Assembly (NCBI GenBank): GCA_030704615.1
Contig: CM060731.1
Location: 25,606,001-25,670,000, forward strand
Length of the DNA stretch: 64,000 bases
Source of the DNA: Takakia lepidozioides
Lineage: Eukaryota > Plantae > Bryophyta
Reading direction: 5' to 3'
Below, piece after piece: positions 23,677 through 55,300 of the stretch (positions are counted from its first letter, which is position 1; each line of letters opens with the position of its first letter). The translations under genes were made by a program, and so were the position numbers. The notes beneath the pieces were generated by a model. The model was not told the origin of the DNA, did no database searches, and saw only the letters and a list, made by a program, of their open reading frames with translations.

Positions 23677-24587
23677 TCAAACCTTGATGGGCTCCACGCC
23701 CTCAGGTATAAGAACAGATGATCCTGTGGTCTTGCGACTCTCCAAATCCTCATGTGCTTTGGCTGCGTCTGAAAGAAAGTAAGTCTGGTTCGTCCGAATC
23801 TTGAGTATGCCCGCTGCCACTGCCGCAAAGACCTCCCCTGCTGTTGAGAGAAGATCATCCCGGGCCAGGACATAATGAAAAAGTGAAGGCCGGGTCATAA
23901 AGAGTGACCTAGTTGCCAAAGCTGAAGTGGGCACTGGATCTGGTGGCCCAGATGACTGTCCAAAACTCACAAGGTAGCCCCGAATGGCTAGGCACTCCAA
24001 AGATCCCTGCATGTTCGGGAAGAACCATATTAGATTGAAGTCGCAGCCTCATTTTTGCCAGTGAACCCCAAAGGTGTAGTCATAAGAAGTTGTTTGCCGT
24101 AGACTTGTGGCCATTGGCCCCGCGCCCAGTTTGGGTGGAACACAAAGGGACAGAAACTACCTTTGTCAGGGGCTGACGCCGGTAGTATGACTCACCTTGA
24201 AACATGGAATTGATCCAAGGTTTTCCAGATATCCTCTAGAAATCCCTTCACACAAACATCAATCGGCTGTGTGTGATCTGCCCAATAACTAGACCCCAAA
24301 AGGGCCTGGGCTTTTGGCTCAGCCTCAAGTTTTCAAAGTTGGTAAAGAGAGGTACAGGAACAATTCCCTTGATGGATTTGAAGAGGGTGTGAGAGTACCC
24401 AGGACAATGCATCAGAAAGTCGATATTGTCTTCAGATCCCCACACAACGGGCATTTGCAATCCCCCTTTCCTCTCTGCGTCTGATTGCTGTTCAAAGGTA
24501 GAGAACGTACTCATAAGATGTTGTTTGCCGTAGCCTTGTGGCCATTGACCCCGCACCCAGTTTGGGCGGAACACAAAGGGTTCAAAG

Positions 24588-24625
<38 letters not shown>

Positions 24626-27600
24626 CTCTACTGGCTATGGGCGAAACATCAGCTGCAAATTTTTGGCTTACCTGAAGAGTATCCTTGCCAACAGAATCGT
24701 AAACAACCTGGACACCTGCGCCACTCGTGACCTCTTTCACCTTCTCCACAAAATTCTCTTCGGAGTATATGATGACATGGTGGGCACCATCCTCTTTGGC
24801 CTGAGCGGCTTTCTCTTTGTTTGAGACTGCGGCAATCACAGTCGCGCCAATGCTACTGGCCCACTGAACCAGTAGTGAACCAACTCCACCAGCTGCTGCA
24901 TGGACCAATATTTTGTGCCCTGGTTCAACCTGCAGAAACACAATCTCAGTGAAGTATTCGATCTACCGCATATCCTTCAGCTGCTTGAGAATGAACATAG
25001 AAAGCTTCGACTATTCAGCCAAAAACAGGCACTGAACCCTATTACAAGTACAACTCACATGACACACATGGCTGTCATTGTGCTGCCAGTTACACCATAC
25101 AGAGAAGAATGTTAAAGGAAAACAGAATGAAAATGAACATTATAATGTCTCAGAGCACAAGTGAACGCAACAGAACTCTGGAGATAGAGAGAGAAACTTC
25201 TAACTTCCAGGTGAAGCCACAGAGCTTATGGGTCAAAGCGCAGCACAAACGAAGAAATTAGCAATAGGAAACCAGGTCACCATCCCAGCTCACAAATGGA
25301 CTCTAATGGTAAGCTGCCGAGCATTTCTGGTCTTTAAGACATAATGCCTCTGTCAGGGATGAACAGCCTCTTGAGACACTGTTCCAAGGCTAGCAGTTAT
25401 GGAGGAAGATTTGAAGGCCACTGAGTTGCATCGCTTTGAGGCCATCACTTTGCTTGGAATCCCCATGGTGATATAAGCCTGGTCTTAGGAGCATGGTCTT
25501 TCCAATACCAATCAATCCAACTGCAGCCAACAAGTCGAGATAGAGAACCTTGAAGCATTTCCGAAGTAAAACTTGAGCTGTCATTCCCTTGAGGATGATG
25601 GCAGCAGCTGTGACATCATCTATGTCCTTTGGAATCGTGACAAGTTTGTGAGCGGGAATAATCCTTTCTTCAGTGTAGGCACCAAGCGAACCTGTGTGCC
25701 ATCAGCCTCCAGAGAATGTACTCATAAGATGTTGTTTGCCGTAGCTTTGTGGCCATAGACCCTGCCCCCAGTTTTTGGGGGAACAAGAGGGAACAGACAC
25801 TACCTTTGTGAGGGGCTCACTCCGGCAGTGGGACTTTCTTTCTCATAAGCAATTATTTTGGGCTTCCAATATTTTCTCTAGAAAGACGTACACACAAGCT
25901 GTGTGTGAGCTGCCCAGCCTTCACAGAGTCGACCAATAACAACATCCAGTTGGTTACTTTTGAATTTTTATTTCTACTTGAGTGTAAGCAAAAGATTGAG
26001 TATTTCGCCAAATGTTTTTGTAATACGAAGGTGCTACGCAGCAAAATAGGTCAGCCCCTGAAAATTTTGCAACAAAACTCTTCAAGATGCCTTCAAGGTT
26101 GCAGACATATCATAAGACCAGATGTTGTGGCAGCTCCTTCAAGTTTTTCATAATGCTAAAAGGAACTCACAAGCTCCAGTATTTGTTTTAATGTTAAGTG
26201 CAGGTTAAGGCCTGATACTGTGTTGAAATTACCCGCATATGCAACTCTGTCTCCAACTTTCCGCCCTGTCAATCCTGGACCGACTGCTGTCACCACCCCT
26301 GCAGCTTCCATTCCTTATCCACCAGAGCCACAGTAAACTTTCATGAAAAAAATTGTAAGGAAGACACAACAGGAGAAAACTCTTCCTCTCAACCCTATGG
26401 CATTTCTGCCCTCTGCAATCCACTAGCAGGGTCTTCTCCCAGAGTATGCAACTCAGTCCGATATTGTCATTGAGCACACACAGCTGGCAACAATCGGATT
26501 TTCGAGGGAACTGAGTGCAAATTTCAGGGCTGTCATGGTGAACGCATGCCTTCCCATCACTGTGACAAGCCCTCTGCCACTGGTACACATGTTATTGTGG
26601 TCAGTTACACTGTAGGGACCAGATTACCTAAAAATTATCTACAGGTTTTCCTAGAGCAAGGTGAAGGTAGAATACCAGGAATGAACGGAGTGTCAGTCTT
26701 GTAGGCACCCTTGCGGAAGTAGACATCAATGAAATTGAGACCAATGGCATTCTGCTTGACTCGCACTTCACCGTCCCCAGGCTCCCCAACTTCTATGTCC
26801 TCCCATTTCAGCACCTGTTCTCACACATATTGGATTTGTATTGTATTCACTACTGAGACATCTAAAGGTAAGTGGTTTTCTTGGAAGCCTTTGAGTAAAA
26901 GCTTGACCGATCAGTCCCACCTGAGAGACAGAGAGAAAGAAGAAAGAAATGAAATGAAAGACTTTATAATGTCAACGGGAAGCTTAAGTGCTTATGGGAC
27001 AATAGAAAGCAGGATAAGAAAGTGGGGTCCTCAACAAGGTGGAGAGCCTAGTGTAGATCAAAACAACGAAAATCAACTTCAAGAGATTCTCTAAGGTGGA
27101 GAGCCTAGTGTAGATATACAGCCAAGCAATACTGAAAGACCTCAGTGAAGCATTGGCTATCCTGGAATAGACAAAAGAATCGACCCAAATCTCCATAGAA
27201 GAGAGCCCAGTAAAAGAAGAATGTTCTTCGGTCTTAATCTCTCATCTTCCTAGTGCAAGCAGGCCACAAACAGTCATGCTCCAAACTGTCTCCTCAACCT
27301 GCAGGCTGTGCTAGCACACCCGCCCGAAGTCTCTTTAATAGCCCTTTTAGGTCCTTCGGGATCAGGAAAATCCAGTTCAGAGCGTTCACATGGAAGAGCG
27401 CAGATAGAACTGCAGACAAGTAAATGGGCTGTAAGATTATATTACCGCGAAGGACTAGAAGGTGTCGTGGTAAAACTGCAGCTTTCTTATAGGGGTGTCT
27501 GATTTGAAGTTCCACCAGCTAACATGATAGTTGCGATCATGTTTGGAAGAAATATACAGCAACAGACAGTCCGTGTCATTCAGACCTCAGCATAGCAACA

Positions 27601-31433: not shown

Positions 31434-34400
31434 CAGTGTTGGTCTGGTATCTGGGTTTCGTCAGGTATCAACTTGGGCATCAACCCGGGTCTCTCCTAAC
31501 CTAACCTACTGTTCTGTGTTCCCATAAACATTTGTAATACCCTACCCGAAGGTTCTCGAGTTCCCTGACGGCCCCCCAAACCCTAACAGGCGGCAATTAG
31601 GGTTCTCCTTTCCCCGCCCCCTACCAGAGTTTGATTCTTCGCTGCAGGTCTGTTTGGGTATCATGTTAATATGCACATAGACATTATGGATGTAGGGTTT
31701 CATGAGATTATGAGCGCCTCTTTTGCCAGCTTCGGCGGCAGATTGATGGAGGTTGTACAACAGATTTGGAATCAAGGAGAGTGGAGCAACAATTGTGGTG
31801 GTTTTTTATGGTTTTAGAGCTACTATGGGCATATGTAAGCATGAGTATGACCTAAACCTCTATGTTTGAGTGTTTCAGCTCGAGTCTTAGTGCAAGTTAA
31901 GTGTTTGAGCAATAACAATGGAGGACTTGGAAGATTGTGATTTTCCAAGGGAGGATGCTGAAATTTTGTCACTCACTGGTGTTGTTGTAGATGAAGGTGT
32001 CACCTTTGAGGAGGTCCTACAAATAACTGCTGAGGATGTTGAGGATGTTGAGGAGGTCAGAATTGCTGAAGAAGATGCTTTGCGGCAGCGCCTCAAGGTG
32101 CTATTAGAGATTCAGAAATTTTGGGTTCCTTACCATGGAGGATCTGAGGCATGGGCGTTCTTTGTTTTGAATGATGCTGCAAGTGCTGTAGATGTCCAGG
32201 CTACCCAGCTGATGAGGTGTGTAATGTGCCATTCAGAGTCCCATGAAGGGAGCTCTCACAGCTCCACCAGATCTCGTAAAGGATTTGTAACCTACAATCC
32301 TGAACATGACATTACTGCCATGAAGAAACATGTAAGTAATGAGCATGCTCACGATCTGGCCAAGTACAAGTCCCACAAAAAAACCTTGGAGGATAGAGAT
32401 CCAAACAAGAGGCAAAAATGTAAAAAGAGATACTCCACTGCTCCTTTTGCCATAACCAACTTCTTTGGATCTGCCACACCATACATGAAAGATAACCCTA
32501 CCCAGAAGCGTTTCATTGAAGATCTTGTCTTGATGATTGCCAAGGGCTATATGCCTCTATCAGTAGTAGAGAATCCATGGTTGAGGCGTCTAGTAATGAG
32601 GCTCCATGGAGCTGTGGTGTTTCCCTCCAGGAAACAACTTGTGCGTGAGCATCTTCCTGCCCTTCTTGCAAAGACTATGGAGAGGTATATGTTGCCTTTG
32701 ATAGCTCAATGTGCAATAGTGACAGTCTCATTTGACCTTTGGATGAGTAGATCAGGTTATGATATCTTTGCATTGGTAATAAATTTATCAATGAGGTGTG
32801 GCACCCTTGCTATGTTACTGTTGGCTTTTTTGAGGCCCCTGATACATGTGGGGCTGCTCTAGCTGAGTAGGTGAAGGCTCTCTTAGCTGAGCATGGCTTG
32901 ACCAACAAAGTTTTGGCATATGTCAAGGATGAGGGGGCCAATATTGGCACCCTTACAGCTGCACTCACATCTATTGTGAGTTGTGATCCATTGAAGCTGC
33001 AGCAACTATATCCTAGTACTTGTTTTGGACATGTGATGAGCAAAGCTTGCCAATATGCAACAAATGAGGCCAAGGTTAGTGAAGGCATGAAGGAGGTCAA
33101 CCTTAAGGGTGCTCAGCAGGCCCTTCAGAAAACCATAACATGGACAAAGAAGTCCGGGAAGGGGAGGATTGAGTGGCAGAGGGCCTGCACTGAGACTGGA
33201 ATGCGACACAGGAAATTAAGAACGCCAGTGAAGACGAGGTTTGCCTCCAAAGTCATTCTGTTCCAAGAGCCACTTGAGTATGCTACTGCCATTAACATTT
33301 GTTATACGCGACAGAGCAACACATTGTTGAAAGCTCGAGTTCCAAGTGGCGTGACTTGGGCCATCGCACGGGTAGTAACTGATACCCTAAACCCTGTCGT
33401 GCATCAATGTTTGTTAAATCAGAGAAGGGGTTACTGGCTTTTGAGTGATGCATTGTTTGCTGCCATGGCCATTATGGGGAAGATGAATGTTGCATACCAA
33501 CAACGAGCTCTAGTTCAGCCCCCTCTACGCTGTGGTGAATTTGACCAAGAAATTGAGATTCTGTACGGTCGTATGGCGATGGCGGTGATCAATGTTTTGC
33601 GTCCCTTTTTGTCATTTGCAGAATCTTTCAATAGGGCAAAGGCCCATAAACATGTTGGCTTTGATGCTCGATCCTTGCTTTAAGGGCATGAAGTGTCTGA
33701 TGGATTATGTGGGTAGAGATCAGGCTGAAACTTTGGTACAAGAGTATGATGCTTTGGTACTGCTAACACTGCTGAATTCAGTGATGGATTGTTTGAATCC
33801 TCGAGTTGACTATGAATTTGAAACCGTAAACCCCATTCCAGGTCATACCATCACTTCTGATTCTTTGTTTGGATCTGTGGCATCACGAGAGGAGGCCTCC
33901 GAGGGTCTGTTGCAGGCATAATTGTCTTTGTTTCGTCGTATTTCAATGGATAATGTGGACAGCCTTGATCCCTTGAATTGGTGGTTTGAGAATGAGACAC
34001 GGTTCCCGAATATGGGCCTTCTTACCCGACAAATACTTGGCATCCCTGGTTCTCAAATTGAGACCGAAATGATCTTTTCAGTGCAGGTGTTCTCACAAGT
34101 TTGAAGAGGTGTCGACTTGGAGTGGATAATCTTGACAAGCTAATCATGATTTACAAGAACTGGCCTAGCGATGCTCGGGCTGATTGTAAACTTGTTCATG
34201 AGGACAAACTAGATGATTTTTTTGTGAATGAGGAGGCACTATTAGAAGACAACGAGGAGCTGCTTGAGAAAGCTAGATACTTTGAGGATGACGACTGGGG
34301 TACTTTGTAATGTAGAGTAGAGATTTAGGGCTAGGGGCATATACTAGCTATTTTGATTATAACTTGACACTTTGATCTTCATTTGTGAGACACTATGGAT

Positions 34401-34788: not shown

Positions 34789-36517
34789 GTTTTGACCCCG
34801 GGTACCCGACGGGTTAGGGTCCGGGTTACCTGGATCCGCACCCGGACCCGTCCTATCCCCAAAAACCCGGACCCAGACCTGGTTTCATTTCTAAAAGGAA
34901 CCCGGACCCGCCTGCTATGGTCAGGGTCCAGGTCTTAATTTCAAGTCGGGCATGTGTTATATGTGGTAGGTTATATGTGGTAGGTTCTGCAATGTGTCGA
35001 GCAATAGGCCAGCAGCCTACCAGCCCCCACCAAGTTGTAGCCACATACCACCTCAAAAGTTGTTGTGGGTTCAATCCACATATTGGTGTCACAAAGTTGT
35101 GCCCTTCAAGGTCCAGTGACACTATATGACGCCTCCTAATTTACACCTCCCAAAGGAGGCGTCATATATTGTTTTCATGAGGCTGGCTCCCACACATCCA
35201 AGCTATAGTGATCTGTGAGCCTTGAGGCATATTACTATTGTTAACATGTTTCAGAATTGATATTGAAGAATGGAACTCAATTCTATTTTAATTATTATGT
35301 TAAATAAGAAATACATATTCATGGTATTTTTTGAAGAAATGTGTCCTATAATAAAATTCAATATTAAGATTTAATTTTATTTCACCCAATAATAATTTTA
35401 TCCCTAATTAATCTTATTTTTTTAATTTATTTATAAATTAACTAGGACCCGGATCCGAACCCGTGAACCCGCTAATATTTTCCAACGACTACCCGGACCC
35501 TGACCCGAGTCCATGCTGAGCAACCCAAACCCCAACCCGCAACCAGATTTTCCAAATTTCAAAAACCCGGATCCGGACTAGGCTCCAAAAAAATACCCGG
35601 ACGCGGCGGGACCGGCGGGTTCCTTAAAAAAGGCACAACCAGCACAACACTGGACTATAGCTGCTTAGTGCTATCTTGGGCTTGCTGCCGCTTCTACCCG
35701 AACTAAAAACCAGCCTGCACACATGACTGAAAGTTGTCATGTGAAAATTTACCTCTATGCTGCTGTCGTAAACTTGAATGTGAAATTTTTGCATTTTTTT
35801 TCATGTTAGAGTGCTGTTGGAGACAATCATGTTTGTTCTTCCCAGGTTGGGTGCTTGCAGAAGTGAATGACACGGTATATGGAACTTGGAAGGTTAGCAG
35901 GGTGGTGAAACAATGTGATGGTCTCACATTCTGAGAGTCCAAGTGGAGCACAATTCAAGCAAACATAAGTGTAGAAAGTCTTGCGCGTTTGAATACTGCT
36001 GTCCAGTCCTTGGCTTGACGCGGAGTGTCAACACACTACATACTCAACAGTGACAAAGTACACTATGTACATAGTCTTTACTGGTTCACAACCCACTGAA
36101 CCCATTGATACCCATGTGATTATATGGTGACCCTGTTTATGAGTAAAAATAATTTGAAGTCAGTCTTGGGATTCAGCTTCACTCCATGATGTAGAGGCCG
36201 TACAATCTGGCCTTTACAGGCTATCCTGTTTAGCCTATGGTGATTGCAATTGCCCTGTACCGAACACAGAGCCTCAAGTACTGAGTATTAACTTCATGAT
36301 TTAACCTGTCTCAGCTTGCCATACTCAGCTTGCCATAATCAGGCAGAAGTGGCCTCCTCAGGCAGTTTACCTGAGTCAAATTCACTCTTCAGTGGGAAGG
36401 ATGATTTTGTTTTGCAAACCACCAAGGCATCCTGATTTAAAGTGAAGTGCACACCATAATCATAAATCGCGTTGTGCCCCCCTTCAGAACTGAGAACGGT
36501 GAGAAATCAATTGATGA

Positions 36518-39500
36518 TCAATTGGTAGATAAAAGGCACTGTGCAAAAAGGCGCTTCCGAATCCAGAACACTATGAGATCTGCTGTGAGCTTCTTCACGT
36601 CAATCAGAAATGGCTCAATTGTGCTTGGAGGATTACCATGTGATGTAAGAGAGAAGCCTCGTGACCCTGTTAATGCAAGACCCAAATAAGTTAGAAGAAG
36701 GTAAAAGAGCTTTTAACAGAGCACCGGGAGGAGAGAGAGGGAAGGTGGAGGAGAGAGAGTAGTTTCGTCACCCAAAAGACAAAAAAGGAAAAGGACACCT
36801 AAATGACATACTCTCGCATGAGTGAAGGTAAGCTGTGAGAGAGGGGCAATCGTCATAAAAGTAGAACTCTCTCTAGTTGACCAGCAATAGCTGGAAACAG
36901 TGTAACTTAAAGAGCGGGCTCCTTATCCGCATATGGCTACTGTGTGTAGTAGGAGGTGTGTGCTCTCTGAAGACTGCAACCCTGTTGTCCTGTGCCCTGT
37001 GGACTTGAAAGCCCCTTGTCACCCACTTTGGCAAAGAATGCCCAGTGAACCAGGTGCCCCCAGCACTTGCCACAAAAGAAAGATTCACATGCTTTGTTCC
37101 AAGCTGCTAACATGATGAGTTCTTGCAACACTCAGGGACAAGACATCTACAGTACCTTCAAGCTGGCCATCTGGGAAAAATGCCCAGAAAGAGTATGGAA
37201 CCTCGTTCTTCACGAAGCTTCCCTGTAGCTGCACATGCCACCACACAGGTTTCCAGTGAACTTCGCAGGGTTTGCGGTTCACCTTGGCCTCCTTGAACCT
37301 TATATAAGGAGGCAATGTATCTTAGTAGCAGAGTCTCCACAGTCCTTAATCTTTAACAGTTCTCATTCACAAAATAGACTTAAAGGAGGTTCCTCGCCTA
37401 CACCCCTGCTTCCATTTCTCCTGTCTTTTCTGCTTCATCTAAGCCAACTGCAGGGTCTATGGCCACAATACTACAGCAAGTGAATTATGCATACATTCCT
37501 TTCTATCTTTCTTTCTTTCTTGTCCCAGCAGCAGAGTCATGCAACAGCATTTCCAATGCTAACCCAATTGCGGCCCTTCACTCAACGATCAATGCCAGAA
37601 TGTGGTTGGCTGTGCACAAGGCTGTAGCCATGCTGCATCAGTTTCATGTCCTGGCAGGTTAGAACACACAACCTGCTCTATTTAGCAGTCTCCTGCGGAC
37701 TATTTGCTCACTCCAAAGGTACTCTGAATGAGTTCTTCTCTTCAAATGCATCAGCATCCTCCTCCTTCCCATGTCTACATAGATTGTACTGGTCTTTTTG
37801 ACTCCAGGTCGCGTACCTGGTTATCTTCAAAAGTTACATCAATGGCTGACACACCATCTTCTTTCTGCAGGAAGCTCAGCACTTGTGGAATGACATCCTC
37901 CTCCATAGTTGCAGGTAGAGATTTGACTAGTGCTGCCTTCTTTGCTGCCTTCTGTGCCCCAACTGCTGCTGCTGCTTTTGGCCTTGGCGGGCTGGGGCTA
38001 GAATCTGGGTTAGGGCCAGTGGTGGGGCCAGCCGTGCTTGCAGGCTCAGTTGTTGCTGCTGAAATCTTGGGGGGCATTTTTTGTGGGGGAACTTCAACCT
38101 TGGGATTATCTGTGAATGTCTCGCTTGCGGCTGGCCGAGTGCTTGAATTTTCTTCTGCCACCGAATAACAAACAGATTACACAAACACTCGAGATCAAAT
38201 CATGACCATCTAAAGGTATGAGATCTCTGCGTTTCTAGTTACTCCTCATTTTGTGCGTGGGAAGCACTCCATTGATAGAGTAAAACATAGCAAAACGATC
38301 CGAATCCCCGTCATTGCCAACAGGTACTGAATTCTATATTAGCAAGACATTTTGATACATGAGAGGATTGTGTGCTCAGACTTAAATTCAATGCCAAAGC
38401 CAGTACCCGCCAAACTTGGAACTTTCCTATGGTGCTCCAGAGGTCGGATAGTGATGTGGGCAGAAGGGTGACTGATAACCAGAGAGACGGTGGAATTGGA
38501 GGATCTCGAGAGTCAGCATTAGGCTGAAAGATTAGGGGAAGGAGAAAACAGAAGCTTTGTGATGTTTTCATGGAGAATACTTCACAAACACACACCTAAC
38601 AGGCTCCAATCCCATAGTTCTGTGATCTACCGGAGGTAAATCTAAGAAAAAACACATAAGAATGAGAAAGAGGGGGAAACCTGCTACAACAATTACGTTG
38701 TTGAAGCCCCCAGCATCGTCACCAACTGTGGGCCAGTCAGGCGAGTGCTGCCATTGTCCATCCACAATGAACTTATACATATACTTGCCTGGTGCTAGCT
38801 TCTGCCATATCCACCCACAACCATTGGTTAACTATTAGCTTATATCAGTAACAGCTACTAGAAGTTGAACAGACAGATGGCATGAACGTCCATCAATAAT
38901 CACTGATGTCAAAAGACGCGTGAGATGACAAATTTGGGAAGGAACTGTATTTCAGTTTTTACTTTTTATTGCAGCTTTTTCCACATCCCATCCATGAACA
39001 TACCCTGCTACCCCACGGACATCCAATTTGTGAATTAAACCCAAACACCCAGGAAGTGACAGTAAAGAATCAATTTTTTAATTCCAGACGCTTCACGCTA
39101 ATGGATCTGCGTCCGGATGACCTCAAGGGTCTACCCACTCTCGGCACTAGACTGAAATGTAAACTCAGGGCAGGAAGCCTACCTTTGAACAGCAAACAGA
39201 AGCAGAGAGGAAAGGGAGAGTGCAATTGCCCGTTATGTGGGCAACCTGAAGACAATATTCATTTCCTGATTCATTGTCCGGGGTTCTCTCACCAGAGAGA
39301 CGCTCTCCTCAAATCTATCAAGGGAATTGTGCCTGTCCCTCTGTTTACCAACTTTGAAAGTCTCGAGGCTGAGGCCAATAGCCCAGGCCCTTCTGGGGCC
39401 TAGTTACTGGGCAAACCACACACAGCAGATTGATGCTTGTGTGAAGGGATTTCTAGAGGATATCTGGAAAACCCGGATCAATGTGTTATATCAAGGTAAG

Positions 39501-40688
39501 TCTTACTACCAACGCCCCTGACAGAGGTAGGTTCTGTCCCTTTGTGTTCCGCTCAAACTGGGTCAATGGCCACAAGGCTTCGGCAAACAACGTCTTATGA
39601 GTACATTCTCTCCTTTCTTACTCATTGGATTCTTGAATACAACTTAAATCTATCATTGAAGGGTTTCAAGAACATATGCACGACACACATAGGCATCTAG
39701 GATGCAAACTAGACTAGATGCCACAAGGAAACTGGGAAGTCCACAAGTGCCCACCTGCTTGACAGCAAACAAGCCGGTGGGACCTTTCTCTAAGGGTAAT
39801 TTACTCTCCCAGTTGAGGAAGTCACCCGTGAGCAAGACCTCAGAGCCTTGACCCTTCCATGTGAATTCCACATCCTGTACCACCACTGCCCCACACCCCA
39901 TCACGCTTCCATCATCTTACTGTTATTATCCAACAATTCGTGCTAGTGTCCTATTGTCCAATCATCCCCAACCGTAAACATCTGAAATTGCATAACAAGT
40001 CTGCATTTGGCAACTGGGCCGTCCACAATTGAGCTTATTACGCCAACATTTTAGAATGTACTAGAAAAGTAGAACCACTTTCTTGCATCTATCTCATGTA
40101 TCCTGAATCATGAATCCTGCATCCCTGCAATTGGAAAAAGATATGGGACATTAATCCCGACACTGGCTGTGCTGCAAGAGAGATGCACGGGAAAGCGTGA
40201 CAGACTCATGTCATAGTCTAGGAATGAGTGAACACGTTCCGAAGAACATTTCTACTGTGCCTAATTCTGCAAGTTCGCAGCAAAATATTCAAATCCCCTC
40301 TTTGCACTTATCATCACGAAAGAGCGCCAGACCTTCTACTTATCAACGAATTATCTGACATTCGTAATTTAATCAGAAATGCAAACACTCATGAGCGATG
40401 GAATGACATACAAGTGGAGGTCCCGGATTCTTGACTGGCAATGACGACCATTCCATGAATTGAAGAGCATTGTCTTGAGAAACAAGGACTTTTACACTTC
40501 CGCCACAGGTACGAGCTTCTTCTACGAGATGTACCACTGAGGGGAATGCCATGAGAGAAAAATTCTTGCAGGGGAGAGACAAGTTGGCAACCAGAAGCGC
40601 ACTTGTGCAAATTAACACAAGTCACTGACGGAGGCAGCTGGCGAGCTGGAGCCATAGCCACTCCCAGGCAGTGACCTGCGCACGCCAT
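36518..40688 (-). CDS. Putative plastid CBM48 (AMPK-beta-type glucan-binding) + DUF2996/NdhV-like fusion protein, 6 exons, 362 aa
   Basis: Exons 40688-40412, 39885-39755, 38801-38681, 38154-37817, 37228-37156 and 36666-36518 are all GT-AG with phases 1,0,1,0,1 and total 1089 nt. Order: Ser/Arg-rich N-terminus; CBM48 (VEFTWKG..V.LTGDF.NW, LAPGKYMYKFIVDGQW, NNVIVV); Pro/Ala/Lys linker; DUF2996 (MEEDVIP, YSFWAFFPDG, STIEPFLID, VFWIRKRLFAQ). Confidence 0.85.
38990..39606 (+). mobile_element. LINE 3' fragment, copy D (longest copy; intron 2 of the CBM48-NdhV gene)
   Basis: ORF remnant KLRAGSLPLN..CPLCGQPEDNIHFLIHCP is a typical non-LTR C-terminal CCHC finger. It is followed by FLEDIWKTR and the shared 3' end. 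The 5' boundary is approximate. Confidence 0.85.
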
Positions 40689-41733
40689 CTCCGTCCTCCA
40701 ACCCTTCTACAACACTCACGCTCGCTCTCAGCCTAGCAATCCATTCGCAGGACTTGCGTGCCTACAAAGATTTTGCAACGTGAGAGAAAATTGCGCAGGC
40801 GTGCGTGATACCTGGGATGAATCCAGCGCTGAGATTTTGAAGCAAGACGAGTCCAGCGACAGTTCGTATCACAGTCCTACGTGCCGCTGGGTGGGTCTGG
40901 TACCAGTGGGTCTGGTAGCCCCGTTCTTGGTTCGGACCTATCCATATGTCCGTACCTCAGGCACGGGTAACCAAACTCATCCTCACGGAGGGCAGAGGGA
41001 CATTAGCTGCACTGCGTGCCAGTCCATAACGAGCACCGGACTTTCTCAAACTACAAACCAAAAGAACACAAAGCGGAGTATTCAGCTTCGAGTCCCTGTG
41101 GACGGTGATGACAACTACGTAGGTTTTGTTCGGAGATTCTCACACACATTTGCCTCCAGTTTCGTGTGGCAAGGTCGGGTGTCAGATCTTGACGGTACTT
41201 GAGAATCTACCCCGCCCCAGAATTGGTTGTAAGGGTTTGATTTGTTCTCCCTGCCAGAGTGATTGACCATCACTTTCCTCTTCTTGGTTCAATGCATAAT
41301 AGTCTTGCTTCCAAAAAGGATGGATCATCTTATTAGGGTTATCTAGAATTAGGCATCCGATTCAACTGACCCCACCATCTGACTTTGACCTCACATCTCA
41401 CCTTGAGCTCATCAAGACGAGAGCGAAGGGCGGTACGTCAAACTCGCCCCGCAGAGCTGCTGTAGCTGTTTGAGATTATGGAAACTGTGATATAGTGTCC
41501 TTAATTGCACAAGATTTGTGGCCAGATGAAGCAGAAGTTGAAGTTTTCTTGGACATTTGTCACGACAAGTATATGCAAGTCCAAGGAGGAAATTCCAGGA
41601 AGAAAGACTGACTGCAAACACGCTGACTGCAAGAATGGGTGGCATTCCGAAGGAAGGCAAGCAATGTATGAACAAAATGGTTGCCTCAAGTGGCTCTTGA
41701 TGCACAACTCATTTCCAAATGTAGGAGGACTCG

Positions 41734-44575
41734 ATGAAGATTGAACATGCAACTGTCGGCCATGGCAACAGTGCAATGGCAGAGATCGGCCATGGCAACA
41801 GTGCAATGGCAGAGATACAAGAAAGAAAACGTTGCGAGAGAGGAGTGACGATGGCGACCTGGCATCTCTGTAGGTGTCGTTTCAACGATTCGGCTTGCGT
41901 CTCCAAAATGAATCTCCCCACCCAACAGTGCTCAAGAATGAGCAGTAGGTAACTGAGCTATGGAAATCCCAAGACAAATCTCGAATCCCAGGTATGCTTC
42001 CTCTGTCTCTATTCTGAATAGAATAAGTGGCAAGTCCGAATTCTGTCTTCATGTCCCTGATTACGATATCCGGCGGAGGGATTAAGCTTGCGGTTGTCTA
42101 CCATGCAGAGCCGTGGTCTTTCAAGTCTGGAATGAGACCCAGCTGTTTGCTTGGCATCAATTGGCATCTGGTTGTATTAGCACGTCCACCATCAGTAGCC
42201 CTTATAATAGAGGCCGAAGACAAATTACAGAGGAGAAGAAAAGCAGCAAGGAAACTTGTGGAGCTAGTGGGGATATAAGTGCACCTTGCAAGGAGGGACG
42301 ATCCAAGGAGGCAATGTACATTTTGGATTCGACGGAGCACCGATACTTTCAGGCTACGTTCTCCAAGCTCCGTACCCGTCTCTTACAGGGTTGCTGTAAG
42401 GCGAGAGTTCTAGCCGAGGCCAAGGGAGTCCATGCCCACATCATTAAAAGCGGGCTACAGCCAAATATTTTCATAGGAAACAATCTTCTTAGCACGTATT
42501 TGAAGTGCGGGGGCGTTGTGGATGCCCGTCAAGTGTTTGAAAAAATGCCTGATCGGAACGTGATCACATGGAATACAATGATAGCAGGCCTAGCTCAGGA
42601 AGGGCATGATGTAGACGCATTCGAAATCTTTTGGCGAATGCAACGAGAAGGCGTGAATGCAGACAAGGTCACTTTCATTAGCATCCTGAATGCATGCGCC
42701 GGCCCAGATACTCTGAGACTGGGCAGCCGGGTCCATGCAGACATTATCATGGCTGGATTTGAGTCCGATGTCCGAGTGGCGACTGCCCTTGTCAGCATGT
42801 ATTGCAAGTGCGGAAGTGTGGTGGATGCGTGCCGTGTGTTTGCCAAAATGCCCGAGCGAAATATTGTCTCATGGAATGCCATGATTGCAGGACTTCCTGG
42901 GGAAGGTCATGTCCAAGAGGCTTTTGATCTTTTCAGCCTAATGCAACGAGAAGGCATGAAGCCCAACAAGGCTACTTTCATTAGCATCCTCAATGCTTGT
43001 GTCACTCCATCAGCTCTGGAAGAAGGCAAGCAGGTTCATGAGAGCATCATGTATGCTGGACTGGAGTCAGATGTCCATGTGGGGACTGCCCTTGTCTACA
43101 TGTATTGTAAGTGTGGGAGCCTGGCAGATGCGCGCAGAGTGCTCTCAAAAATGCCTGAACGGAATGTGGTCTCTTGGACTGCAATGATTGCTGGACTCGC
43201 CAAGCAAGGGCATGCCGAAGAGGCTTTTCAACTCTTTTGGCAAATGCAGTGGGAAGATATACAGCCAAACAAGGTTACTTTCATTAGCATCCTCAATGCA
43301 TGTGCCATCCCAGCAGCTCTGGAACAGGGCAAGCTGCTCCATGCTGGCATCATCAAAGCTGGAGTTGAGGCAGATGTCCAAGTGGGAAATGCCCTTGTCA
43401 GCATGTATTGCAAGTGCGGTAGTGTTCTGGACGCTCACAGATTTTTCTTAAAAATGCCTGAACGAAATGTGGTCTCATGGAATGCAATGATTGCAGGATT
43501 TGCTCAGACAGGCCATGGTGGACAGGCATTTGAAGTATTCCGCCAAATGCAACAAGTGGGAGTGAAGGCAGACAAGGTCACTTTTATTAGCATCCTCAGT
43601 ACATGCTCCAGCCCAGCAGATCTGGAAAAGGGCAAGCAGTTTCATATGGGCATAATCAATGCTGGATTTGAGTTTGATCTCCGGGTGAGCAATGCCCTTG
43701 TCAGAATGTATTGCAAGTGCAGCATGGTGGATGCGGAGAGAGTATTCTTGAAAATGCCTGAACGAGATGTGGTCTCCTGGAATACGATGATTGTAGGACT
43801 TTCTCAAGAAGGGCATGTTGCAGAAGCTATTGAATTAGTCCATCAAATGCAACAAGAAGGCGTGAAGCCTGATAAAATCACATTCATCAGCCTCCTCAAT
43901 GTGTGTACCAGCCTAGCAGCTCTGGGAAAGGGCAAGTGGGTGCATTCCCACATCGTCAAAGCTGGATTTGAGTCAGATGTCAGGGTGGGCACTGCCCTTG
44001 CTACCATGTATTGCAAGTGTGGGAGTCTGGAGGATGCGCACAAAGCCTTTGTCAAAATGTCTGGACGGAATGTAATCTCGTGGAATACAATGATTATAGG
44101 ATGTGCCCAGCATGGGCGTTGCGATGAGGCGCTTCAACTCTTTGAACAAATGCAAGTGGAACAGGTCAAGCCAAATGAGGTGACATTCATTGGTGTTCTC
44201 TCTGCATGTAGCCATGTGGGCCTAGTGGATGAAGGCCACCATTATTTCCTTTCCATGAGTCAAGATCATAGCATTATACCAACAGAACACCACTACAGCT
44301 GTATGGTTGACCTTCTCGGCCGCGCAGGGCACTTGGATGAGGCACAGGAGCTCATCTACAAAATGCCCTTTGAACCAGATGCTCCAGTGTGGGGGGCATT
44401 GCTTGGTGCCTGCAGACTCCATGGTAATTTGGAATTAGCAGAACATGCTGCAGAATGTATCCTCAGATCTGAACCACAAAACACTGGAGTCTATGTGCTG
44501 CTTTCCAACATATATTCACTGGCTGGCAGGTGGGATGATGTAGCAAAGGTGAAAAAAGCAATGGAGCACGTGTAA
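41734..44575 (+). CDS. PLS-class pentatricopeptide repeat protein, E subclass without DYW; probable organellar RNA-editing specificity factor
   Basis: Probable exon 1 runs from ATG 41734 or 41851 to 41948, then intron 41949-42108 (GT..AG, phase 2 fits) and exon 2 at 42109-44575. Repeated L-S-P triplets are followed by P2-L2-S2, E1 and E2 (VWGALLGACRLHGN, YVLLSNIYS.AGRW) and then a stop. Confidence 0.92.
41756..41817. repeat. 30-bp tandem duplication at the PPR 5' end
   Basis: tcggccatggcaacagtgcaatggcagaga occurs twice. Confidence 0.9.
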
Positions 44576-51651: not shown

Positions 51652-52277
51652 GGATGATTGTTATAGCCTGTTCGTCCCATGACTGCATCTATGGATGGAT
51701 TCATGTGAAAACACCAGAAAGTATCTCGTCCAAAGCTTCCACCAGAGCCTCAGGTTACCTAGCACAGGACAAGACATACAACTGCCGAAGAGTGGTGCTG
51801 CAGTGGATCCATGTTATTAGCGAAGCTGTCACTGCTACTAGAGAGTTGTATTGTCGTGGGAACATGACCATTTGTCAGGGTTTCTAGACCCCTGTAGCAA
51901 ACATACTACCAGAACTGCGAATGAAGTATCTTAAGAAAATCTGCACGCACCCGTCTCCCAAGCGAACAAATTTATTTTCATTAGCATCCTAAATTCATTT
52001 ATAGAAATCCAAACATACCACAAATCATGGCGATCCCACAGTAGTTAATGGTTGAAAGGGCACCTGAGTGCTGAGCTACTTTTATCTTGGTAGTTATGTT
52101 TTCCAGTTCTCATGGATGCAACTTCTGATGTTGGTGCAAAGAACAACTTTCTTGGATGGCATGGTTGGCTCAGACTATAATCTCCTGTTATCGACATCTT
52201 TTAGGTTTAGGCAGCTTACTTGCTCAGGCAGCCCTGATATTTCGACTCTTGATACACGTCTTCTCTCTCCTCCCCTA

Positions 52278-52323
52278 GGTCAATGGCCACAAGGCTGCGG
52301 CAAACAACGTCTTATGAGAACAT
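52278..52323 (+). mobile_element. 46-bp LINE 3'-end insertion, copy E, with a perfect 14-bp TSD
   Basis: TCTCTCCTCCCCTA at 52264-52277 and 52324-52337 flanks ggtcaatggccacaaggctgcggcaaacaacgtcttatgagaacat. Confidence 0.92.
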
Positions 52324-55300
52324 TCTCTCCTCCCCTACTCCTTGCTCAGTATTACAGACAGTTATTCAGAGCTTGCTGATCCTTTCTAAATATCTGGTCT
52401 TAGTTTAAAGCTTACTCCTAGATGGACTGGTGCTGGGTGCTACCCAAATCACTCTGTGATTTAAAGCCTTGACGGCCTTCTGTCAGGGTTATTTTTTCCA
52501 TGATCCATTTTAATACGATTTCAAGGGTTTGTTTTTCCCTTTTAGATTTTGTTTTAAAGAAAACAAATGATAAGCGTGTGAGTGTGAGCTGTCGCTCCCA
52601 GTGTTTCCCTTTCCCAAAAAAAAAACAAAACAAAAGACATTTATCCTAAAAATCATGAAATTTTTGAGGGGCTAGTTAGCCTATGTGTAATGTCTCTTTC
52701 AACTCAAAACTTGTGTCTATGATCAATATTTTTCTTTTTTCTTTTTTAAGGTGAGCCCTTGTTAACTTTATTTGAATTATTGAAGGGAAAAAAGTTGAAA
52801 CCATTATTGGCCCTTAGGCTGCCATAAGGCCTGAACGGTAACCAGTCCAAGTACCAAGGGATGCAGACCTGCCACATCGCCCACCATGCTCTATATTGTT
52901 TGTAGGAAATCGGCCAAGCCATACTTAACGGGTAACGGGATTATCTTTTAGTTCATAGTATTGAGATTGAACAGCCATTAGGGAGAATCCGCCGAGCAGT
53001 AAGGGTAGATCAATGAACCACCAGTGATAACTCAAGAGGGGAATACTAAAAAGGTTCCAGGAGCCTATACTTCTGATTCAATCCACACCTTATTATTCCA
53101 TGTGAATAATAAATATTATTATTCCCCACAATAATATTGTCATTTATTTCATTTTCAATTTGATTTTTTAGATTTTCAGTTTATTTTTTTCTCCGGATGT
53201 GTTATTCTACCTCATGGTGCCAATGGGTTTATTTTTTCCCTTTAATAAACTAAATGGCTTCATGCCCTTAGGGTTTTTTTTTTTAACAAATTATTTCTTA
53301 GGACATGTCGAAAGAAGTGTTAGACCCTCACGACAATATGTCACGAGAATTGTAATATATATATACTAAGGCCATATTGAGATTTTTGTTTTGTTTTTTC
53401 AGTATAAAGGACTAAGAGCATCCCGCTATCAGCCACGGAAACGGCAAAATACTATGTCAGTGAGATAACCCACAAAAACGGAGCCCCACTGGGGCACGCT
53501 AAAACGCCCACTAAACTGCATTTTTCTTTCTCTCTCTCAGTTCTGATTTTCTTCCTAAGTTACGCTTGTTGGACAAACATTTTTTGTTTTAAAGGCTACT
53601 TGAGACATGGAGAAAAAATGCAGACGTCATTTTCTCATCTCTCTCTCCCTCGGCTCTAATATCCTCCTTTGCATAGAATAATCCATGTGAGAAATCTGGC
53701 CGCGGAAAAAAAATTCACTCGTATCTTCCAATGCAAATTGTTGTGAAAAGATCTATAAGACAGAGATAAAAATGTGGTCGTTAATTTCATAGCTATGATT
53801 TTTTTCTGAAAGTACAATTGCTCAGTAAAATTGATGGATGCTGATTTAAGTTTTTTCTATGAATAAGTCGTACAAATTTTTTGCTTTTTGCTTGCAATCC
53901 TCCTTCGAACTAAGCCCCTCAATGCCATGTATGCCTTCTTTTTTCCTAATTTCGTTTGTGGCATATTATGTTCATGTTTAATTAGAGTCTCTTTGGTTTG
54001 TCAAGCAAAGTTTATTAGTAGTGTGAAATTAGCCAATAAATAACTAGTTTTTATATATGACACTTGGGCTTGATCCAAGTGTCAACCCAGGGATCAAGAT
54101 ATTTGTTGGCCCCTGAGCGTGGCTTATCTTCAATGCGAACTCGCGGTGAGGCTCATCTCTCTCGAGTTGAGCCTCACGCGTCGGCTATGATTCCCCGTAG
54201 CTTTTGGGGTGTGTTTGGCTTGACTCGTAATGTATGAGTGATGGGGTCTAGTTTTTATTAATCACTCGAGAGATGCATCATGTCTTTAGTGCAGGATGTG
54301 AGTGAGAGTTTTAGCGCCGATGTTTTGTTTTTGTTTCTACTAAACTTGTTGAATAGATCGTGGACTGAGTGAGCTGGTCCTAGTACGAAAAGATCCAAGT
54401 CTATAATTTGAGAGATGGTACTCTAGCTAGGGAGTAATATGTAGGTGTCCATGCATGGCTCATAGCTCAATGGCACTGGCTGAACGTTAGTTTTCAAGTG
54501 GGATGATGGCTCCATCAAAGATACGCATGGAAGGGGTTATCATAAGGGAGCCACGGTGCAGCTGGATTGAAGTGCCCGGAACCTGCTTGAAGGAGCCAAT
54601 AACAAATGAATAGTTGTTGGGGTAGTCGGAGAATAACCAACATTTGTCAGGCTGTCGAGGCCAGCTTGTGAAGGGAGGTGTAAACGGAGAGGTTGTTCAT
54701 CCCTTCAAGAAAGCCGCCGGTAAAGCCAGAGCTTGACAGGCCATCAAAGTAATCGTTGGTGGTTAGGTGGGCGCAGGAAGGCATGCATTAATAGAAGTGG
54801 AGGGAGCCCAGGCCACGGACTAGCCCATCTTGTCTTGCCCTGGGAGTGTGAAGGGGGATTAGGTGAAGATCCTCGGCAGATCAGAGCAGGGAGCTCATTG
54901 TTTTGGCTGGCTGACCGTTATAAGTTTGACAGTAGCTGAAGTAATAAGCTACATAGTTACATTGCCAGGTGATAGTTTTCGTTTGCGAGTCTTCATTTGA
55001 TGGCATGCCGGTAGCGCGGAGATATGATAAGTGACAGGGTTCTCATCAGTTTGCTCCAGCAGAGTATGCGGGCATGAATGTAGCAAGAAGGTGGTCTGTC
55101 AAGTGGCCGCAACGGTGACGTATGATCTTCTTGGTCTTGGAGGAACAGTTGGTGGGAAATTCCTGGAGCTTGACAGTAGAACAAGCTAAATCGATATGTA
55201 AATTAAGGAATGTTGATAGAACGGACGGAGTCAGATCGTGGTGGTGAAATGAAAAGCCAACTCGGACAAAAGCTGAACTAAACGATTGTGTTTAGATTGT

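What the first reader, a model, noticed from the sequence alone, without database searches (positions are those of the whole stretch)
36518..40688. Starch-binding CBM48 fused to an NdhV-like NDH subunit domain: a candidate starch-photosynthetic electron-transport tether
Seen: six GT-AG exons with matching phases give one 362-aa ORF. It reads transit-peptide-like leader, CBM48, ~85-aa Pro/Ala/Lys linker, then DUF2996. The DUF2996 half has no separate leader of its own. Known: DUF2996 is NdhV, a peripheral, ferredoxin-site-associated subunit of cyanobacterial and chloroplast NDH used in cyclic electron flow; the NdhV proteins I know have no CBM. Plastid CBM48s (PTST proteins, SEX4/LSF1) target partners to starch. 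Inference: this protein could tie NDH or ferredoxin to starch granules, or sequester an NDH factor on starch so that cyclic electron flow follows carbon status. The ORF track splits the gene into unrelated pieces, so it is easy to miss.
Basis: partly seen in the sequence, partly recalled or inferred. Interest (0 to 1): 0.9.

Follow-up and report, generated by a model that had tools for sequence, protein, structure and literature searches.

The report
Starch-binding NdhV of seedless plants
In this moss-like plant, and in nearly all other seedless plants and related algae checked, the NdhV subunit of the chloroplast's cyclic electron-flow complex carries a starch-binding module that seed plants lack, an apparently unreported and still untested link between stored carbon and photosynthetic electron transport.

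Summary
The gene is real. Six GT-AG exons give 362 aa, and one 1,741-nt contig from a probable RNA run has all five joints, including 38681/38154. Exons 2-3 score as AMPK1_CBM (CBM48) and exon 6 as DUF2996.

It is not a one-off. The same architecture occurs in Chlorokybus, Klebsormidium, Zygnematophyceae, liverworts, mosses, lycophytes and ferns; Pyramimonas, Ginkgo and angiosperm proteins are plain. All five intron sites are shared from Closterium to ferns. Angiosperm NdhV keeps three of them and lacks exactly the two CBM exons. No separate plain NdhV gene was found in seedless plants. So this is probably their NdhV itself, which papers reported as missing in Physcomitrium and ferns.

The four AMPK glucan-binding residues and the two ferredoxin-contact basic residues are kept, and the CBM is as conserved as NdhV (58% each). 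I found no paper on the fusion. Starch binding, NDH association and any regulatory effect are inferred, not tested.

The parts
40412..40688 (-). Exon 1 coding part: plastid transit-peptide-like leader, aa 1-92; ends in a phase-1 intron
   Evidence: best matches are moss orthologue leaders (Physcomitrium 42%, Ceratodon 33%, Sphagnum 28%); targeting itself not tested
40689..40805 (-). 5' untranslated part covered by the RNA-like contig; holds a 3-codon upstream ORF at 40744-40733
   Evidence: contig begins at 40805; sequence
39755..39885 (-). Exon 2: first half of CBM48 (aa 93-136), with W118 = AMPK beta1 W100
38681..38801 (-). Exon 3: second half of CBM48 (aa 137-176), with K146, W153, N170 = AMPK K126, W133, N150. 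Exons 2+3 form a symmetric phase 1-1 module
37817..38154 (-). Exon 4: Pro/Ala/Lys-rich linker (aa 177-253) and first helix and strand of the NdhV domain (aa 254-289)
   Evidence: linker low-confidence in the orthologue model
37156..37228 (-). Exon 5: middle of the NdhV domain (aa 290-313)
   Evidence: 54-79% identity to fused and plain plant homologues
36518..36666 (-). Exon 6 coding part: C-terminal NdhV domain (aa 314-362) with K338/K339 = T. elongatus NdhV R122/K123 (ferredoxin contacts); stop at 36520-36518
36200..36517 (-). 3' untranslated region, covered by the contig at least to 36200 (the end of the stretch laid)
39115..39612 (.). High-copy repeat inside intron 2; spliced out, not part of the protein

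Best explanation
The gene encodes the NdhV subunit of chloroplast NDH in the form that appears ancestral for streptophytes: transit peptide, CBM48, flexible linker, NdhV. Shown here: the gene, its splicing, both domain identities, the conserved binding residues and the distribution. Strongly inferred (about 0.9): orthology with Arabidopsis NdhV. Inferred (about 0.8): after plastid import the CBM48 binds alpha-glucan (starch surface or soluble malto-oligosaccharides), while the NdhV domain docks on NdhS/NdhI and helps ferredoxin bind. Mechanism I commit to: NdhV is a loosely bound, dose-dependent activator, so glucan binding partitions it between starch and NDH, and NDH-dependent cyclic flow or dark chlororespiration follows the size or state of the starch pool. 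The sign is not determined: starch could hold NdhV away from NDH or concentrate it at thylakoids next to granules.
For: Orthology: five intron sites and phases shared by the window, Physcomitrium, Riccia, Diphasiastrum, Adiantum and Closterium; Arabidopsis and Aristolochia keep three and lack only the CBM exons. At2g04039 is NdhV (PMC9614478). No separate plain DUF2996 gene turned up in a named seedless plant. NdhV function: the Sphagnum orthologue model fits 6l7o_V at Z 13.0, rmsd 2.1, 103 residues; the R122/K123 equivalents are basic. NdhV is transient and stimulates ferredoxin-dependent plastoquinone reduction in a dose-dependent way (PMC7021789). CBM function: W100/K126/W133/N150 equivalents present (PMC4032982) and invariant in 14 orthologues. 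CBM and NdhV are each 58% identical on average, against 22% for the leader and 27% for the linker. Precedent for a CBM of this type as a reserve sensor: AMPK (PMC2642990).
Against: No binding, localisation or mutant data exist here. The Physcomitrium orthologue is not in the PSI-NDH proteomics table, which lists NdhV as 'no record'. That table names assigned subunits only, and NdhV was also absent from the spinach structure, so this is weak. The domain tree does not reject paralogy (AU p 0.09 and 0.13). Seed plants do without the CBM. The window copy has Val in place of a Glu found in all 267 homologues counted. The homologue searches are word-limited, so a plain paralogue could have been missed.
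Confidence: 0.45

Rival explanations
1. Structural tether: NdhV bound to NDH on stroma thylakoids holds starch granules or glucan primers at the membrane. It would help to place granule initiation, or in the algae the pyrenoid starch sheath, as MFP1/PTST2 or SAGA1/2 do. The effect would be on starch, not on electron flow.
For: Granules form in stromal pockets between thylakoids, placed by a thylakoid-bound protein that recruits PTST2 (PMC10801857). SAGA proteins localise starch to the pyrenoid (PMC13167743 abstract). The long flexible linker suits a tether. The earliest carriers are pyrenoid-bearing algae (own knowledge).
Against: NdhV binds NDH only transiently, which makes a poor anchor. Linker length varies from 33 to 164 aa. 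The fusion persists in mosses, liverworts and ferns, which lack pyrenoids (own knowledge).
Confidence: 0.2
2. Ferredoxin carrier at the granule: the NdhV domain holds ferredoxin at the starch surface, to feed redox control of starch enzymes or to collect reductant from starch breakdown in the dark. The NDH role would be a second, separable job.
For: Ferredoxin-contact residues are kept. NdhV is proposed to act as a ferredoxin-binding cofactor, and cyanobacterial NdhV is also found in the soluble fraction (PMC4916593). Redox control of starch enzymes is own knowledge.
Against: In the structure NdhV supplies only an edge of the ferredoxin pocket, and alone it had no activity without NDH.
Confidence: 0.12
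3. The CBM48 fold serves as a protein-interaction or stabilising module on the NDH arm and no longer binds glucan to any effect.
For: Seed plants lost it with NDH intact. Diphasiastrum gene models include isoforms without it. One desmid-like transcript lacks it.
Against: The residues held invariant are the sugar-stacking and hydrogen-bonding ones.
Confidence: 0.13
4. The fused gene is an old paralogue that is not an NDH subunit; a plain NdhV exists undetected in seedless plants or was lost.
For: AU tests do not reject the fused proteins as one clade (p 0.094), nor seed-plant plus Pyramimonas plain proteins as one clade (p 0.128). The searches see a limited candidate set.
Against: Shared intron positions. 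Plain proteins from Diphasiastrum and Ceratopteris are isoforms of the fused gene. The seed-plant clade falls among fused rows. Two papers failed to find a plain NdhV in moss or ferns.
Confidence: 0.08
5. Gene-model artefact: two neighbouring genes joined by mistake.
For: Assembled contigs are not single molecules (note).
Against: The 38681/38154 joint is in the contig with 121 letters on its shorter side. The same joint exists in five other genomes, and the full Physcomitrium protein is encoded on transcript-length contigs.
Confidence: 0.01

Closest known systems
NdhV (DUF2996, PF11210): Arabidopsis At2g04039; T. elongatus Tlr0472, PDB 6KHI/6L7O chain V
   Same: Same domain by Pfam, sequence and fold; basic pair at the ferredoxin contact; Pro/Ala/Lys-rich arm before the domain; three intron positions shared with angiosperm NdhV.
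   Different: An 84-aa CBM48 on two exons lies between the transit peptide and the arm. No cyanobacterial, Pyramimonas, Ginkgo or angiosperm protein seen carries it.
CBM48 of the AMPK1_CBM type (PF16561): AMPK/SnRK1 beta subunits, plastid SEX4 and LSF1
   Same: Same fold (Z 13-15) and the four key glucan-binding residues.
   Different: Joined to an electron-transport subunit, not to a kinase scaffold or phosphatase. The donor family is unresolved: the profile scores AMPK beta 74-80 bits, LSF1 68, SEX4 53. NCBI names the Selaginella protein 'AMPK subunit beta-1' and UniRef calls the moss ones 'AMPK glycogen-binding domain-containing protein', which hides the NdhV half.
PTST1/2/3 with MFP1; SAGA1/2
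   Same: Non-catalytic plastid proteins that use a carbohydrate-binding module to bring a partner or a membrane together with starch (domain make-up from own knowledge).
   Different: No coiled coil was seen in the orthologue model, and the partner domain is a photosynthetic complex subunit. It may work like them; it is not a member.

Membership tests
NdhV (DUF2996) | PF11210 above the curated cut-off | tested here: met
   exon 6 alone 37 bits against 27; orthologues 49-76 bits
NdhV (DUF2996) | NdhV fold as in the ferredoxin-NDH-1L structure | tested here: met
   Sphagnum orthologue model against 6l7o_V: Z 13.0, rmsd 2.1, 103 aligned, 40% identity; the window's own joined protein was not folded
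NdhV (DUF2996) | Two adjacent basic residues that contact ferredoxin (R122/K123) | tested here: met
   K338/K339; the preceding Glu is Val in this copy
NdhV (DUF2996) | Orthology with seed-plant NdhV, by gene structure | tested here: met
   introns 1, 4 and 5 at matching sites and phases in Arabidopsis and Aristolochia; site 1 lies in poorly conserved sequence, so that match is approximate
NdhV (DUF2996) | Orthology by phylogeny | tested here: inconclusive
   eukaryotic rows form one clade (100/100) with seed plants (99/96) among fused rows, but the backbone is weak and AU tests reject nothing
NdhV (DUF2996) | Association with NDH and a role in its activity or stability | not testable with these tools
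   needs native gels, pull-down or a knock-out
CBM48, AMPK1_CBM type | PF16561 above the curated cut-off | tested here: met
   34 and 51.2 bits for exons 2 and 3 separately, cut-off 26.8
CBM48, AMPK1_CBM type | Glucan-binding residues W100, K126, W133, N150 | tested here: met
   W118, K146, W153, N170; invariant in alignment A3
CBM48, AMPK1_CBM type | Binding to starch or glycogen | not testable with these tools
   needs a pull-down or calorimetry
AMPK/SnRK1 beta subunit | C-terminal kinase- and gamma-binding (ASC) domain | tested here: not met
   Pfam shows only AMPK1_CBM-type and DUF2996 hits in the exons and orthologues
PTST proteins | Coiled coil plus C-terminal CBM48 | tested here: not met
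   the CBM is N-terminal in the mature protein; no long helix outside the NdhV domain in the orthologue model
Plastid stromal protein | Functional transit peptide | tested here: inconclusive
   composition fits and the region is poorly conserved, as expected; no targeting predictor was available

The most novel reading that the evidence does not exclude
Since before plants reached land, the ferredoxin-loading subunit of chloroplast NDH has carried its own starch-binding module. This gives a direct physical feedback from the carbon reserve to cyclic electron flow, which seed plants dropped by deleting a two-exon cassette and which some lycophytes may switch by exon skipping.
Probability: 0.4. 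Interest if true: 0.88.

Novelty: new variant of a known kind. Interest (0 to 1): 0.74.

Why it matters
I know of no other photosynthetic electron-transport subunit with a carbohydrate-binding module (own knowledge), and no paper on this one was found. If the module works, starch status could act directly on NDH-dependent cyclic flow or chlororespiration in algae, bryophytes, lycophytes and ferns. Even without that, the result corrects the subunit list: NdhV is probably not missing from Physcomitrium or ferns, but filed under AMPK-like names (Physcomitrium XP_024363498.1 / A0A2K1L204). It also gives a clean case of domain loss by removal of a symmetric exon pair. The question is directly testable in Physcomitrium and Marchantia with one knock-out and one point mutant.

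Tried and rejected
It was joined only inside one script to count frame, stops and composition. All searches went exon by exon, and full-length work used natural orthologues returned by the tools, so the window protein has no structure model and is not in the trees.

The first Pfam call failed on a wrong frame and was corrected. The first 40 aa of the NdhV domain found no relevant solved structure. Paper searches for NdhV with CBM48, for DUF2996/PF11210, for the orthologues' accession numbers and for CBM with NDH found nothing on the fusion. Gao et al. 2016 is not held, and Fan et al. 2015 was not read; either may show the moss sequence.

Chara could not be scored because the contig ends at the gene. 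Taxus is a partial protein without DNA. Selaginella had no locus on record. No hornwort or Mesostigma sequence could be identified among the named hits. No exon-skipped joint was listed in this species, but contigs drop rare forms. A stretch at 37060-36940 that reads vaguely like exon 5 is not covered by RNA and was rejected. Earlier scan notes held nothing relevant.

Full report
Observation. The six exons lie on the minus strand at 40688-40412, 39885-39755, 38801-38681, 38154-37817, 37228-37156 and 36666-36518. All five introns are GT-AG, with phases 1,0,1,0,1, and the joined frame is 362 codons plus stop. Laying two public runs on 36200-41000 gave one contig of 1,741 nt (run X1, depth 41.9) from 40805 to beyond 36200 with all five joints, including 38681/38154. 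Run X2, from another study, shows the last two joints. The runs are only guessed to be RNA, but intron-free contigs are hard to explain otherwise. Pfam, exon by exon, gives AMPK1_CBM for exons 2 and 3 and DUF2996 for exon 6, each above its cut-off. The joined model was not searched.

Organism. The leader matches moss orthologues best. The protein lacks the one-residue CBM insertion seen in Ceratodon and Physcomitrium, and its CBM and NdhV exons are only 74-79% identical to Sphagnum. I infer a moss outside both groups; this was not tested further.

Distribution. A search with exon 6 alone returned 57 representatives. Nine of ten long ones scanned carry both domains. They come from Chlorokybus, Klebsormidium, Netrium, Spirogloea, Closterium, Calypogeia, Sphagnum, Selaginella and Adiantum. 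With the Sphagnum protein as query, the top 29 hits all have both domains and add Ceratodon, Physcomitrium, Riccia, Marchantia paleacea, Diphasiastrum and Ceratopteris; no named angiosperm hit, At2g04039 included, has the CBM. Pteridium and Mesotaenium are fused and Ginkgo Gb_40330 is plain. Two complete Pyramimonas proteins are plain, as are the cyanobacterial ones. The simplest history is gain of the CBM in early streptophytes and loss in the seed-plant line. The gymnosperm side rests on Ginkgo alone, and the chlorophyte side on Pyramimonas alone.

Is it NdhV or a paralogue? At2g04039 is listed as NdhV in PMC9614478. Exact spliced mapping shows the same five intron sites and phases in Physcomitrium, Riccia, Diphasiastrum, Adiantum and Closterium as in the window. 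Arabidopsis and Aristolochia have the phase-1 intron after the leader and the two introns inside the domain; their post-leader intron is 74 or 136 nt and shows no CBM remnant. The CBM exons are flanked by phase-1 introns, so they can be removed in frame. Diphasiastrum gene models include isoforms that skip exactly these two exons; whether those are real transcripts I could not check. Two searches aimed at the domain found no separate plain gene in a named seedless plant; the plain Diphasiastrum and Ceratopteris entries carry the locus tag of the fused gene. One unnamed desmid-like transcript is plain (P0010). In the domain tree the eukaryotic rows form one clade and seed plants fall among the fused rows, but the backbone is weak and AU tests reject no alternative. 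Orthology therefore rests on gene structure and distribution, about 0.9.

The literature fits this. [quoted passage not shown] A fern survey did not detect ndhV in Azolla, Salvinia or Schizaeales, using a 60% identity filter (PMC9328107). The fern proteins found here come from other genera, so that conflict is suggestive, not settled.

Are both halves intact? T. elongatus NdhV contacts ferredoxin through R122 and K123 (PMC7021789), which align to K338 and K339. The Sphagnum orthologue model has two confident domains and a low-confidence leader and linker; residues 254-361 superpose on 6l7o_V at Z 13.0, and residues 91-177 on AMPK/SNF1 and SEX4 modules at Z 13-15. The AMPK residues W100, K126, W133 and N150, shown by mutation to be needed for glycogen binding (PMC4032982), correspond to W118, K146, W153 and N170, and are invariant across 14 orthologues. 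Mean pairwise identity is 58% in the CBM and 58% in NdhV, against 22% in the leader and 27% in the linker; linker length runs from 33 to 164 aa. The CBM is thus under selection as strong as the NDH subunit, and the spacer has no fixed length. One oddity: the window copy has Val337 where all 267 homologues counted have Glu; both runs agree with the genome there. Its effect is unknown.

Mechanism. NdhV is a transient subunit that raises ferredoxin-dependent plastoquinone reduction in proportion to its amount. A glucan-binding module on such a factor would most simply divide it between starch and NDH, so that cyclic flow or dark chlororespiration follows the carbon reserve. AMPK offers a precedent for this module acting as a reserve sensor (PMC2642990). 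I give this 0.45; its sign is open. The rivals are a membrane-to-starch tether like MFP1/PTST2 or SAGA (0.2), a module used for protein contacts (0.13), ferredoxin delivery at the granule (0.12) and a non-NDH paralogue (0.08). None of these functional steps is shown.

Novelty and verdict. The two-domain annotation already sits in public databases, so the architecture is not unseen by machines. I found no paper that describes it: none holds both NdhV and CBM48, and only two mention DUF2996. Subscription papers, including the original Arabidopsis NdhV paper, were not searchable. I class it as a new variant of a known kind: a known subunit with an undescribed, ancient starch-binding module. Interest 0.74: the structure and distribution are firm, a specialist would probably be surprised, and the test is easy in model bryophytes, but the function is unproven.

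Noticed in passing
window 39115-39612 (intron 2); related copies at 24075-24580 (83-86%), 25711-25899 (70%), 52275-52331 (95%): A repeat of about 500 bp with summed contig depth up to tens of thousands in both RNA-like runs and TC-rich loose ends. No long terminal inverted repeat and no Rfam match. Possibly a short mobile element common in transcripts.
   Followed up: partly
window 36599-36597 (- strand, codon 337): Val replaces the Glu next to the ferredoxin-contact basic pair; Glu is present in 267 of 267 homologues counted. The RNA-like contigs agree with the genome.
   Followed up: partly
window 40744-40733 (- strand): Three-codon upstream ORF inside the transcribed 5' leader.
   Followed up: no
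window 42113-44575 (+ strand): Single-ORF PPR gene with an E motif, head to head with the NdhV gene, about 1.4 kb away; the ORF stops right after the E motif.
   Followed up: partly
window 32871-34310 (+ strand): Broken ORFs that resemble a hAT-type transposase remnant by eye (from memory); the first ORF gave no Pfam hit.
   Followed up: partly
L006:2233-6503 (Diphasiastrum O6H91_04G031500): Annotated isoforms of 238 and 212 aa skip both CBM exons, giving a seed-plant-like NdhV from the same gene. Support by reads not checked.
   Followed up: partly
L013:141-752 (run ERR2041121, protein P0010): Plain DUF2996 protein that groups with the Closterium fused proteins (98/93): a skipped isoform or an independent loss.
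   Followed up: partly
Proteins P0081, P0184, P0085, P0086 (alignment A1): In Ceratodon, Physcomitrium and some liverworts the first of the two ferredoxin-contact basic residues is Asn or Ser.
   Followed up: no
Protein P0022: A plain DUF2996 protein filed under the haptophyte Diacronema lutheri that groups with green-algal rows; contamination is likely but was not checked.
   Followed up: no
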